From Ascidiella aspersa (taxonomy: Eukaryota): a stretch of DNA of 64,000 nt. The notes beneath the pieces are model-generated. The model was given only the letters and a program-made list of their open reading frames with translations. It searched no databases and was not told the DNA's origin. The stretch covers positions 26,598,001 through 26,662,000 of the forward strand of contig OZ004607.1 in the NCBI GenBank assembly GCA_963924565.1, given 5' to 3'. The position numbers and the translations under genes were made by a program. Positions 11,520 through 12,810 of this stretch are shown here, in pieces; the stretch's first letter is position 1, and each line of letters begins with the position of its first letter.

Positions 11520-12810
11520 TTACTTTTCCCCCTCTGGCTTGAATACATAAGTCAGGCCACATTTGCCACAATACTGTCGGTCAAAGTGTGAAGCCATAAA
11601 AACCCCAGCGCCACATTCAGGAATGGGGCATTCTCTTCTCAGGCGGGTGATCTTCCCATTCTCATCAACCTTCAAACAAGGGGACATTTAGTTTTATTTT
11701 CATGAAGGCATTGAGTTGGTGTAAAAAGGTAATCTAGTCATTCTCAGAAAAACTAATCGCTCACTTGTAAATCAGATCGGCGAGTGATTTTATCATCATA
11801 GATGTCATTTTAGTTTCCATTCAATACAGCTAAGTGAAAATGCTACCTTATAGTACTTGAGCGTTGCAAGCTTGACCTTCACCCTCTTGTGTTTGATTTT
11901 TTTTGGAGTGGTGTAAGTCTTCTTCTTCCTCTTTTTGGCACCTCCTCTCAATCGGAGGACAAGGTGAAGGGTGGACTCCTTCTGGATGTTGTAGTCACTG
12001 AGGGTTCTTCCATCTTCAAGCTGCTTTCCAGCAAAGATAAGACGCTGCTGATCTGGGGGAATTCCTAAATATCAAGTAAGTTTTTAGTCAGGAGTTTGAA
12101 AACAAAACTGCTTGGTATTATATATTACATTGCTCAGATTTTCAGTATTATGTTATTAATCACCTTGATAAACATCCATCATTAGGTGTCCTAAGTTTTA
12201 GCATCATTGCAAATGCATATGCGATAAACATATACATATGTGAGTAAATATATTTACCTTCCTTATCCTGAATTTTTGCTTTCACATTTTCAATGGAATC
12301 AGAGGATTCAACCTGCAAGTATTTTTAAAAATAAACATTAAGACTTAAAACAAAAGTTTAGCTGGACAGCAATCTTGGTAGGTTTTCAAAATTTGTTCAG
12401 CGGATGGCGGTTCTAACCATGGCAGTAGGCCGAAGCCACTACTCTTTTAAAACCCACAAGCGGTATCCTCATTACAAATTTTTGAACAATTTTCAGTAAT
12501 AAAAATTTAATTTCAAGAAATATATAGCCTACAGTACTTTATCTGAGCAATAAAAAAGTTAAGCGCTTGTCTAGAATCCTACAACTTTTATCAATAGAAA
12601 CAAAACAAGCGGACAAAATTTAAATTGCAAGAAATATATAAATATGGTTGAAAAATTATAATAATACGCCAACTCGCACCTTTACCCCAATAATGTTAGC
12701 AATTTAAACCCATGTACGATTCTAGACCAGTGCCAAAAGTTCACGAAATAAAATCATTTTACCTCAAGTGTAATAGTTTTTCCCGTTAGGGTTTTGACAA
12801 AGATCTGCAT
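11520..12810 (-). CDS. RPS27A: Ubiquitin-40S ribosomal protein S27a (eS31) fusion, 156 aa
   Basis: Exons 12763-12810, 12258-12312, 11847-12064 and 11520-11669 have GT-AG ends and consistent phases. They give [43 protein letters not shown]...[20 protein letters not shown]...[36 protein letters not shown] at 11467-11472. Confidence 0.98.
11738..11806 (-). ncRNA. Intronic box C/D snoRNA in last RPS27A intron; putative 28S 5'-domain guide
   Basis: C ATGATGA (11793-11799), guide TCACTCGCCG, D' CTGA (11772-11775), C' GTGAGCGA, D CTGA (11744-11747). Same strand as the host gene. Confidence 0.8.
12130..12212 (-). ncRNA. Intronic box C/D snoRNA, SNORD58/U58-like
   Basis: Terminal stem TTGC/GCAA, variant C box ATGATGC, D CTGA (12134-12137). 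The 12-nt guide CTTAGGACACCT (12184-12195) is complementary to 28S AGGUGUCCUAAG and equals the recalled U58 guide. Confidence 0.8.
12385..12486 (-). ncRNA. Intronic atypical box C/D RNA with internal cUUCGg hairpin
   Basis: Terminal stem TTCAAAAATTTGT/ACAAATTTTGAA closes C box ATGAGGA (12466-12472) and D box CTGA (12397-12400) in K-turn register. Internal hairpin AGTAGTGGC-TTCG-GCCTACT. Confidence 0.7.

What the first reader, a model, noticed from the sequence alone, without database searches (positions are those of the whole stretch)
12385..12486. Atypical C/D RNA: candidate guide for 18S helix-34 cytidine acetylation
Seen: a long terminal stem, C (ATGAGGA) and D (CTGA) boxes in K-turn register, no clear C'/D' pair, an internal cUUCGg hairpin, and the segment AGAAC-C-GCCAT (12404-12414). 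This pairs with recalled 18S 5'-AUGGC[C]GUUCU-3' at 10 of 11 positions. The single C:C mismatch falls on the middle C of CCG. Known: that C is ac4C (yeast C1280, human C1337), made by Kre33/NAT10 and guided in yeast by the atypical C/D RNA snR4. I know of no established metazoan guide for it (SNORD13 serves helix 45). Caveats: the match is short, snR4/snR45 use two separated guides, and an alternative 9-bp pairing to 28S UGGAUGGCG next to box D exists.
Basis: partly seen in the sequence, partly recalled or inferred. Interest (0 to 1): 0.75.

Follow-up and report, generated by a model that had tools for sequence, protein, structure and literature searches.

The report
Conserved box C/D snoRNA in RPS27A
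A small nucleolar RNA sits in an intron of a ribosomal-protein gene and is kept in a very distant relative, but the stretch proposed to guide acetylation of ribosomal RNA is not kept, so that role is unlikely.

Summary
The RNA is real. It lies on the minus strand (12486-12385), in the intron between the first two coding exons of the ubiquitin-RPS27A gene. No Rfam family matches it.

One orthologue turned up among 80 metagenome RPS27A loci: L012, in the same intron, with silent sites saturated. Three blocks are conserved:
- E1, AUACCGYUUGUGG. In L012 it directly precedes a perfect D' box.
- E2, AUGGUUA.
- E3, CGCCAUCC, at positions 2-9 upstream of box D.

The internal hairpin sequence is not conserved.

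A different helix-34 pairing is conserved. E3 plus E2 pair with 18S 1270-1289, and this is the best pre-rRNA site for both orthologues (5 of 263 joint shuffles reach it). That duplex covers the acetylated cytidine and leaves no 3'-flank arm.

Most likely this is an ordinary antisense or methylation-guide snoRNA with an uncertain target. I put the ac4C-guide reading at about 8%. Expression could not be checked. The scan holds another helix-34 snoRNA note elsewhere in this genome (s1-794503).

The parts
12385..12486 (-). box C/D snoRNA including its terminal stem (about 102 nt)
   Evidence: Sequence and fold. Orthologue at L012 2491-2579. Second copy in L006.
12474..12486 (-). 5' arm of the terminal stem (UUCAAAAAUUUGU)
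   Evidence: Pairs with 12385-12396 in the minimum-energy fold. L012 has a stem of different sequence, GCUUGC/GCAAGC.
12466..12472 (-). box C, AUGAGGA (GUGAUGA in the orthologue)
12454..12466 (-). E1, conserved 5' antisense-like element AUACCGCUUGUGG (12 of 13 identical in L012, C to U)
   Evidence: Alignment. In L012 it is followed directly by CUGA, a D' box. No convincing target found.
12443..12453 (-). degenerate D' region, GUUUUAAAAGA (CUGAAGAG in L012)
12422..12442 (-). internal hairpin, 8 bp with one bulge and a UUCG loop; sequence not conserved
   Evidence: L012 has a different 6-bp hairpin at the same place.
12414..12420 (-). E2, conserved AUGGUUA (7 of 7): a degenerate C' box and/or an accessory antisense element
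   Evidence: Alignment. Pairs with 18S UGGCCGU at -5.0 kcal/mol.
12402..12409 (-). E3, conserved CGCCAUCC (8 of 8), positions 2-9 upstream of box D
   Evidence: Alignment. It has exactly two full sites in 6.1 kb of pre-rRNA: 18S GGGUGGUG and 28S GGAUGGCG.
12397..12400 (-). box D, CUGA
12385..12396 (-). 3' arm of the terminal stem (ACAAAUUUUGAA)
12314..12762 (-). host intron, between the first two coding exons of ubiquitin-RPS27A. The snoRNA ends 71 nt upstream of the 3' splice site.
   Evidence: Exon [16 protein letters not shown] at 12810-12763 followed by gt. Acceptor cag|GTTGAA at 12313.

Best explanation
This is a genuine intron-encoded box C/D snoRNA. It is released from the ubiquitin-RPS27A pre-mRNA and belongs to a family with no Rfam model. 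Its layout is the ordinary two-guide one: box C, a 13-15 nt antisense element (E1), D', a variable hairpin, a degenerate C' (E2), a 13 nt antisense element containing E3, then box D.

The best-supported partner of the conserved 3' part is the 5' strand of 18S helix 34, at 18S 1270-1289 in this genome. E3 pairs with 1270-1277 and E2 adds pairing over 1283-1289. [quoted passage not shown]

Shown: the RNA's anatomy, its conservation, and the complementarity. Inferred: that it is expressed, that helix 34 is the real target, and that the outcome is methylation and not acetylation.
For: Host context and anatomy.

Orthologue and conservation:
- The orthologue lies in the same intron, about 80 nt upstream of the next exon. 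Third codon positions of the last exon match at 14 of 45.
- Both other snoRNAs of the host gene are also present in L012.
- Conserved: E1 12/13, E2 7/7, E3 8/8. The hairpin is unalignable.
- In L012, C is GUGAUGA and D' is CUGA directly after E1.

Support for helix 34 as partner:
- The whole 3' region has its best RNAduplex site on 7.6 kb of rDNA at helix 34 in both orthologues: -27.0 and -22.4 kcal/mol.
- In joint column shuffles, 5 of 263 reach the observed sum.
- In permutations of E2 and E3, 177 of 20000 give any bipartite site.
- The four differences between the orthologues move pairs from one helix to the other: 10+7 bp here, 8+9 bp in L012.
Against:
- There is only one orthologue, so there is no covariation test.
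- Taken singly, the helix-34 energies are reached by 11 of 150 and 6 of 150 shuffles.
- The E3 duplex on 18S has two G.U pairs, at positions 4 and 8 flanking the target nucleotide. In L012 it is only 8 bp long.
- This genome's SNORD33 uses a 14-bp near-perfect guide on the same strand.
- E3 also has a perfect Watson-Crick 8-mer on 28S, at -13.9 against -11.4 kcal/mol.
- From my own recall, not from a call: the equivalent of U1273 is not a known 2'-O-methylated site in yeast or human.
- E2 may be conserved simply as a C' box.
- E1 has no identified target.
Confidence: 0.4

Rival explanations
1. It is an orphan snoRNA with respect to rRNA. The conserved E1 and E3 act on another RNA that I did not test (tRNA, mRNA, another small RNA), or the snoRNA acts as a chaperone-type RNA without modifying anything.
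For: - E1 is conserved at 12/13 next to a canonical D' in L012, yet has no good site. There are 0 fully paired sites in 6.1 kb of pre-rRNA. With at most 1 non-pair there are 3 sites, against a mean of 1.2 in 300 shuffles.
- The best duplex on U1, U2, U4, U5, U6 or 5S is -16.0 kcal/mol, G.U-rich, and falls to -12.1 for the L012 variant.
- All rRNA duplexes found are short or G.U-rich compared with SNORD33 of the same genome.
Against: - The helix-34 site is the top pre-rRNA site for both orthologues, and few joint shuffles reach it (5 of 263).
- The exact 13-mer complement of E1 occurs 8 times elsewhere in the genome. Four are in one repeat family, and I recognised none as a known RNA gene by eye.
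Confidence: 0.3
2. It is a 2'-O-methylation guide for 28S rRNA. E3 pairs with GGAUGGCG (L004 4105-4112) and directs methylation of the U in GGAU. E1 may pair about 108 nt upstream, at CCACAAAAGGUGU.
For: - E3 makes 8 Watson-Crick pairs, six of them G-C, at -13.9 kcal/mol. That is better than E3 alone on 18S.
- E1 pairs with unit 3897-3909 with 1 non-pair (L012 variant) or 2 non-pairs (this copy). That site is 108 nt from the E3 site.
Against: - An 8-mer match somewhere in about 6 kb is expected in roughly one case in eleven (my arithmetic).
- The joint energy of the full 3' region at this site is about -36.5 kcal/mol. That is weaker than the mean best site of shuffles, -39.4.
- Positions 10, 12 and 13 do not pair in either species.
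- From my own recall: no methylation is known here in yeast or human.
Confidence: 0.15
3. It is an acetylation guide for the helix-34 cytidine (C1287 here). It would work with a single arm, as Drosophila SNORD13 does. E3 would hold the 5' strand of helix 34 where yeast snR4 GS2 binds, leaving the CCG free for NAT10.
For: - The E3 footprint is yeast 1263-1270 by my count. snR4 GS2 binds 1264-1271 (PMC5464676 section 8).
- Drosophila SNORD13 works with one antisense element (PMC9226516 passages).
- No snR4 homologue was known in humans in 2022 (PMC9670809 passage). A June 2026 paper still names none for C1337 (PMC13433802 passage).
- This genome has its own SNORD13 (54.3 bits), which suggests rRNA acetylation is in use.
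Against:
- No conserved 3'-flank arm exists.
- The favoured conserved duplex pairs C1287 with a G.
- E3 is in the methylation register, adjacent to box D.
- There is no 5' extension upstream of box C, unlike snR4, snR45 and vertebrate SNORD13.
- There is no similarity to RF01210 at E up to 10.
Confidence: 0.08
4. It is not a functional RNA: a decaying or chance box C/D-like sequence in an intron.
For: Box C is non-canonical (AUGAGGA), there is no D' here, and there is no expression evidence.
Against: Block-wise conservation in an orthologue at saturated silent-site divergence. Much lower divergence than the flanks between the two genomic copies.
Confidence: 0.03

Closest known systems
yeast snR4 (box C/D guide for 18S ac4C1280, helix 34)
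   Same: Both are box C/D RNAs. E3 can pair with almost the same 18S octamer as snR4 GS2: yeast 1263-1270 against 1264-1271.
   Different: snR4 is 186 nt by my recall; one search gives GS2 at nt 142-149. snR4 has a 5'-terminal GS1 upstream of box C that pairs 3' of the cytidine, and its GS2 sits in an internal loop. Here there is no 5' extension and no second arm. E3 abuts box D, and the best duplex covers the cytidine.
SNORD13 / U13 (helix-45 ac4C guide), including the single-arm Drosophila form
   Same: Similar length (about 100 nt), an internal hairpin, and non-methylation-like short antisense elements. The 8-nt string CGCUUGUG is shared with the Rfam U13 consensus.
   Different: The real SNORD13 of this genome is elsewhere (G000 C4, 54.3 bits) and does not carry that 8-mer. 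The candidate gives no RF01210 match at E up to 10. It is intronic with a terminal stem, whereas SNORD13 has 5'-end antisense elements. There is no helix-45 complementarity of note.
SNORD33 / U33 (methylation guide on the same 18S strand)
   Same: A D-box guide that pairs with the GGU-repeat strand of helix 34. The guide contains CCAU shortly before CUGA.
   Different: Three bona fide SNORD33 copies lie on G000 C7 (47.3-53.1 bits), with a 14-bp guide. The candidate's register is 3 nt further 5' (predicted U1273, not U1276). Its duplex is shorter and contains G.U pairs.
canonical dual-guide intronic box C/D snoRNAs of ribosomal-protein genes
   Same: Intronic position 71-80 nt upstream of the 3' splice site. 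A terminal stem. The C, D', C', D order with 13-15 nt guide spacers and a variable D'-C' hairpin. Two further snoRNAs in the same host gene.
   Different: Neither guide has the 10 or more Watson-Crick pairs to rRNA or snRNA that are usual for such guides. D' is lost in this species, and C' lacks both GA dinucleotides.

Membership tests
box C/D snoRNA | Box C (RUGAUGA) near the 5' end and box D (CUGA) near the 3' end, brought together by a terminal stem | tested here: met
   AUGAGGA and CUGA with a 12-bp stem. The orthologue has GUGAUGA and CUGA with a 6-bp stem of different sequence.
box C/D snoRNA | Intronic location on the sense strand of a host gene, about 70-80 nt upstream of the 3' splice site (a metazoan rule, from my recall) | tested here: met
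   71 nt here and about 80 nt in L012. The host is ubiquitin-RPS27A.
box C/D snoRNA | Accumulates as a stable RNA bound by fibrillarin, NOP56, NOP58 and SNU13 | not testable with these tools
No listed holder of the sequence is on record as RNA.
2'-O-methylation guide | [quoted passage not shown] | tested here: inconclusive
   On 18S: 11 bp with 3 G.U here, 8 bp with 2 G.U in L012. On 28S: 9 bp including one G.U here, 8 bp in L012. E1 has none.
2'-O-methylation guide | A methylated nucleotide exists at the predicted site | not testable with these tools
   No modification map of this organism was available to me.
acetylation-guide snoRNAs (snR4, snR45, SNORD13) | Two antisense elements that pair on either side of the target cytidine and leave it unpaired | tested here: not met
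E2 on the GS1 site gives +2.2 to +2.5 kcal/mol, and E1 gives only scattered pairs 3' of the C. The best conserved duplex pairs the C.
acetylation-guide snoRNAs (snR4, snR45, SNORD13) | An antisense element at the very 5' end, upstream of box C | tested here: not met
   The 5' end is the terminal stem in both orthologues. The feature is as described in PMC5464676 section 8 and PMC9670809 section 5.
acetylation-guide snoRNAs (snR4, snR45, SNORD13) | A conserved antisense element on the 5' side of the target cytidine, a few nucleotides away | tested here: met
   E3 pairs with 18S 1270-1277, 9 nt before C1287, and is 8/8 conserved. It includes two G.U pairs, and E3 has a rival 28S site.
acetylation-guide snoRNAs (snR4, snR45, SNORD13) | Acetylation of the target depends on the snoRNA and on NAT10/Kre33 | not testable with these tools
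   Needs a knock-out plus ac4C sequencing.
SNORD13 (Rfam RF01210) | Match to the family covariance model | tested here: not met
   No RF01210 match at E up to 10 in 11800-13100. The true SNORD13 lies on G000 C4 (39.1 bits genome-wide, 54.3 bits locally).
SNORD33 (Rfam RF00133) | Match to the family model, with a guide placing the yeast U1269 equivalent at position 5 | tested here: not met
   Not listed. Three true copies lie on G000 C7. The candidate's register puts the yeast U1266 equivalent at position 5.

The most novel reading that the evidence does not exclude
The conserved octamer E3 is the animal counterpart of snR4 GS2. The snoRNA would hold the 5' strand of 18S helix 34 so that NAT10 can acetylate the CCG cytidine (C1287 here), working with a single arm as Drosophila SNORD13 does on helix 45. 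That would make it the first helix-34 acetylation guide found in an animal.
Probability: 0.08. Interest if true: 0.8.

Novelty: new member of a known kind. Interest (0 to 1): 0.35.

Why it matters
Whether animals use a guide RNA for the helix-34 acetylcytidine has been open since snR4 was described in 2017. [quoted passage not shown] A June 2026 paper still names guides only for yeast C1280 and C1773 and for human C1842.

This locus does not answer that question. The proposed pairing fails the conservation test. It does, however, yield a conserved snoRNA without a described family, whose best rRNA partner is the same helix-34 strand that snR4 GS2 binds. That gives a cheap and specific experiment in a tunicate.

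If the ordinary reading is right, the result is one more lineage-specific methylation guide or orphan snoRNA in a ribosomal-protein gene. That is useful for annotation and not surprising.

Tried and rejected
- **Rfam.** There was no match at gathering scores in the window. At E up to 10 the candidate's best hit is snoZ152, at 19.5 bits and E 1.7. The orthologue gives the same family at 21.4 bits and E 0.96. The D guide in the printed snoZ152 consensus reads differently from E3, so I treat these as chance-level hits.

- **Expression.** The look-up of sequencing runs listed four holders of unknown kind and one RNA run of the same species.

- **More orthologues.**
  - Of 80 metagenome RPS27A loci, only L012 holds the snoRNA. 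A single-sequence nhmmer gave E 7.9e-4. With a two-sequence profile the next best locus, L060, has E 3.8. A motif scan found both blocks only in L012.
  - The viral collection gave no relative.
  - Organism B holds 71% of the sampled words but could not be read.

- **Paralogues.** The genome holds only two near-identical copies.

- **Target of E1.** No fully paired site exists in pre-rRNA. Sites with mismatches are no more numerous than in shuffles. Nothing convincing appears in U1, U2, U4, U5, U6 or 5S. A genome search for the exact 13-mer gave 8 other hits, 4 of them in one repeat family. tRNAs, minor snRNAs and mRNAs were not tested.

- **Relation to U13.** The shared CGCUUGUG is absent from this genome's own SNORD13. 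I rejected it as chance.

- **Relation to SNORD33.** Rejected: three true copies lie elsewhere.

- **Intramolecular explanation of E2 and E3.** RNAalifold proposes a 5-bp AUGGU/GCCAU helix. All of its pairs are invariant, so it can be neither supported nor excluded with two sequences. The helices between the post-C region and the pre-E3 region in the two single-sequence folds use non-homologous 5' partners.

- **Literature.** I found no tunicate snoRNA catalogue (listing only). Supplementary alignments of snR4 and SNORD13 (PMC5464676, PMC9226516, PMC9670809) were not seen. They could refine the comparison of antisense registers.
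Full report
**What is there.** Read on the minus strand, window 12486-12385 is a box C/D snoRNA. Its parts, in order:
- a 12-bp terminal stem with one bulged A;
- box C, AUGAGGA;
- a 23-nt spacer;
- an 8-bp hairpin capped by UUCG;
- a 21-nt spacer;
- box D, CUGA;
- the other stem arm (fold: -29.7 kcal/mol, z -2.2).

It lies in the 449-nt intron between the first two coding exons of the ubiquitin-RPS27A gene. 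Those exons are [16 protein letters not shown] at 12810-12763 and the next exon starting at 12313. The snoRNA ends 71 nt upstream of the 3' splice site. The next intron holds a SNORD58-like snoRNA (25.9 bits, below the cut-off of 42). No Rfam family reaches its gathering score anywhere in the window. The candidate's best sub-threshold hit is at chance level (snoZ152, 19.5 bits, E 1.7).

I fetched one rDNA unit of this genome.
- Its 18S reads AUGGCCGUUCU, so AGAACCGCCAU (12414-12404) pairs at 10 of 11 positions with C:C on the second C of CCG. That C is 18S C1287 in this genome's numbering.
- The 28S string UGGAUGGCG is also present.
- Such a match is not unusual. The 65 nt between the boxes give 3 stretches of 11 nt with at least 10 Watson-Crick matches on 6.1 kb of pre-rRNA. 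In 300 shuffles the mean is 2.7; 81% give at least one and 46% give at least three.
- Only the position of the match is remarkable. The scan holds at least one other first-reader note about a snoRNA guide over the same CCG elsewhere in this genome (s1-794503), so this kind of match has been looked for repeatedly.

**Related sequences.**
- The genome holds a second copy 14.7 kb away, in what looks like a tandem duplicate of the host gene. It differs by one deleted A in 113 nt. The flanking intron differs at roughly 20 of about 130 columns (my count).
This returned 80 loci.
- One of the 80, L012, contains the snoRNA (nhmmer E 7.9e-4). A profile of the two sequences finds no further locus.
- L012 is an orthologue. 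The snoRNA sits in the same intron, about 80 nt upstream of the exon encoding VEPSDSIDNVKSK. Both other snoRNAs of the host gene are present as well.
- The two species are far apart. The last exon is 44 of 45 residues identical, but third codon positions match at only 14 of 45, which is about random.

**What is conserved.** The alignment and direct reading show block-wise conservation.
- Box C is canonical in L012 (GUGAUGA).
- The terminal stem is present but has a different sequence (GCUUGC/GCAAGC).
- E1, AUACCG[C/U]UUGUGG, is 12/13 identical. In L012 it is followed at once by CUGA, a perfect D' box. This genome has GUUU there.
- The hairpin between D' and C' is replaced by an unrelated 6-bp hairpin.
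- E2, AUGGUUA, is 7/7 identical.
- E3, CGCCAUCC, is 8/8 identical and occupies positions 2-9 upstream of box D.
- Between E2 and E3 this genome reads GAAC and L012 reads UAAA.

GCCAU is conserved as part of E3, but AGAAC reads AUAAA in L012. Only 3 of its 5 pairs to GUUCU would remain, and they are not contiguous. With the orthologue in hand, the layout is the ordinary two-guide one: C, 13-15 nt, D', hairpin, C'-like, 13 nt, D.

**Targets.** I scanned the rDNA unit with both orthologues' guide regions.
- For the 3' region (E2 through E3), the best RNAduplex site is the same in both: the 5' strand of 18S helix 34, at -27.0 kcal/mol here and -22.4 in L012.
- E3 pairs with 18S 1270-1277 (GGGUGGUG, two G.U pairs). 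This copy extends the helix to 1279.
- E2 pairs with 1283-1289 (UGGCCGU, three G.U pairs). L012 extends it by one pair on each side.
- The totals are 10+7 bp here and 8+9 bp in L012.

The statistics are moderate.
- Taken singly, 11 of 150 and 6 of 150 shuffled guides find a site at least as good somewhere.
- When both orthologues are shuffled jointly by alignment column, 5 of 263 shuffles reach the observed sum of -49.2 (mean -39.4, sd 3.5).
- When E2 and E3 are permuted, 177 of 20000 permutations give any fully paired bipartite site.
- These tests were designed after I had seen the pairing.

E3 has exactly one other full site in pre-rRNA: 28S GGAUGGCG. It is perfect Watson-Crick, at -13.9 against -11.4 kcal/mol for E3 alone. 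The full 3' region is weak there, about -36.5 jointly, which is below the shuffle mean.

E1 has no fully paired site and no excess of near-sites. It finds nothing convincing on this genome's U1, U2, U4, U5, U6 or 5S. Its exact complement occurs 8 times elsewhere in the genome, with no RNA gene that I could recognise.

**Comparison with acetylation guides.**
- PMC5464676 section 8, read whole, gives the snR4 contacts. GS1 (nt 1-5, upstream of box C) pairs with 18S 1286-1290. GS2 (nt 142-149, in an internal loop) pairs with 1264-1271. C1280 lies in the unpaired stretch between them.
- I counted back from the second C of CCG. This puts a U at yeast 1269 and a G at 1271, where the paper places Um1269 and Gm1271. 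On that count E3 covers yeast 1263-1270, almost the GS2 site. This is the one real point in favour of an acetylation reading.
- Against it: there is no 5' extension. No conserved element pairs 3' of the cytidine: E2 on the GS1 site gives +2.2 to +2.5 kcal/mol, and E1 gives only scattered pairs. The favoured conserved duplex pairs C1287 with a G, which would block its N4. E3 is in the register in which a box C/D particle methylates.
- Vertebrate SNORD13 likewise has its antisense elements at the 5' end and in an internal position (PMC9670809 section 5). Only Drosophila SNORD13 works with one arm (PMC9226516 passages).
- This genome has a true SNORD13 on another contig (39.1 bits genome-wide, 54.3 bits locally, above the cut-off of 46).
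- It also has three true SNORD33 copies (47.3-53.1 bits). Their 14-bp near-perfect guide on the same helix-34 strand shows what a canonical guide looks like in this organism.

**Verdict.**
- The RNA is a real, conserved, intron-encoded box C/D snoRNA of an undescribed family.
- Its most likely mode of action is antisense pairing through the element next to box D. The 18S helix-34 5' strand is the best-supported partner, and 2'-O-methylation of U1273 is the default outcome. I put this at about 0.4.
- Rivals are an orphan snoRNA with an untested target (0.3), a 28S guide (0.15), a single-arm helix-34 acetylation guide (0.08), and no function (0.03).
- No animal helix-34 guide appears in the papers I read. 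A 2022 passage says none is known in humans, and a June 2026 passage names none. Two listings show no title claiming one. I did not read the other listed papers.
- Earlier notes of this scan call the genome 'probably ascidian'. I did not test that.

**Limits.**
- There is one orthologue only, so there is no covariation.
- There are no expression data.
- The statements that the predicted methylation sites are unmodified in yeast and human, and that extra pairing near C' can aid methylation, are from my own recall and not from a call.

Noticed in passing
window 12129-12212 (-); L012 3123-3208: A SNORD58-like box C/D snoRNA lies in the next intron of the same host gene (25.9 bits, E 0.007, below the gathering score of 42). 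Its guide CUUAGGACACCU matches the family consensus. An orthologue is present in L012 (nhmmer E 0.0021).
   Followed up: partly
window 11351-11416 (-); L012 3537-3599: A third box C/D snoRNA (AUGAUGA ... CUGA ... AUGAUUA ... CUGA) lies downstream of the last coding exon here. Its orthologue in L012 (E 3.4e-5) lies upstream of the last coding exon, inside an intron. Either the position changed or this gene has a further 3' exon.
   Followed up: partly
G000:C1:26595675-26595786 (L006 1501-1612), 14.7 kb before the window copy: A second copy of the snoRNA with its surrounding intron. This suggests a tandem duplicate of the ubiquitin-RPS27A gene. The snoRNA differs by one deleted A.
   Followed up: partly
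G000:C4:13127013-13127116 (-), L007 1500-1604: The genome's SNORD13 (U13) gene, at 54.3 bits locally. It is not intronic by appearance, and a TATA-like TTTATA lies just upstream of the mature 5' end.
   Followed up: partly
G000:C7:29364178-29364997 (L102-L104): Three tandem SNORD33 copies about 350-380 bp apart (53.1, 51.0 and 47.3 bits). The copy read in L102 has a 14-bp guide on the 18S helix-34 5' strand that reaches the GG just before the CCG.
   Followed up: partly
G000:C5 about 29.506-29.596 Mb and about 8.15-8.35 Mb: U1, U2 and U6 genes repeat together in a 1193-bp tandem unit, with more than 40 copies listed for each. U4 and U5 genes form a separate interleaved array on the same contig.
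   Followed up: no
L004 (G000:C5:14519000-14528900): The rDNA unit is 7552 bp long: the helix-34 motif recurs at L004 1405 and 8957. 18S is 1811 nt. Many 18S copies lie in both orientations across C5 from 8.8 to 14.5 Mb.
   Followed up: no
G000:C8 0.73-1.61 Mb (L097-L100): A repeated element of unknown nature: four near-identical copies that end in the 13-mer complementary to E1, followed by a (TA)n run. The match to E1 is probably coincidental.
   Followed up: no
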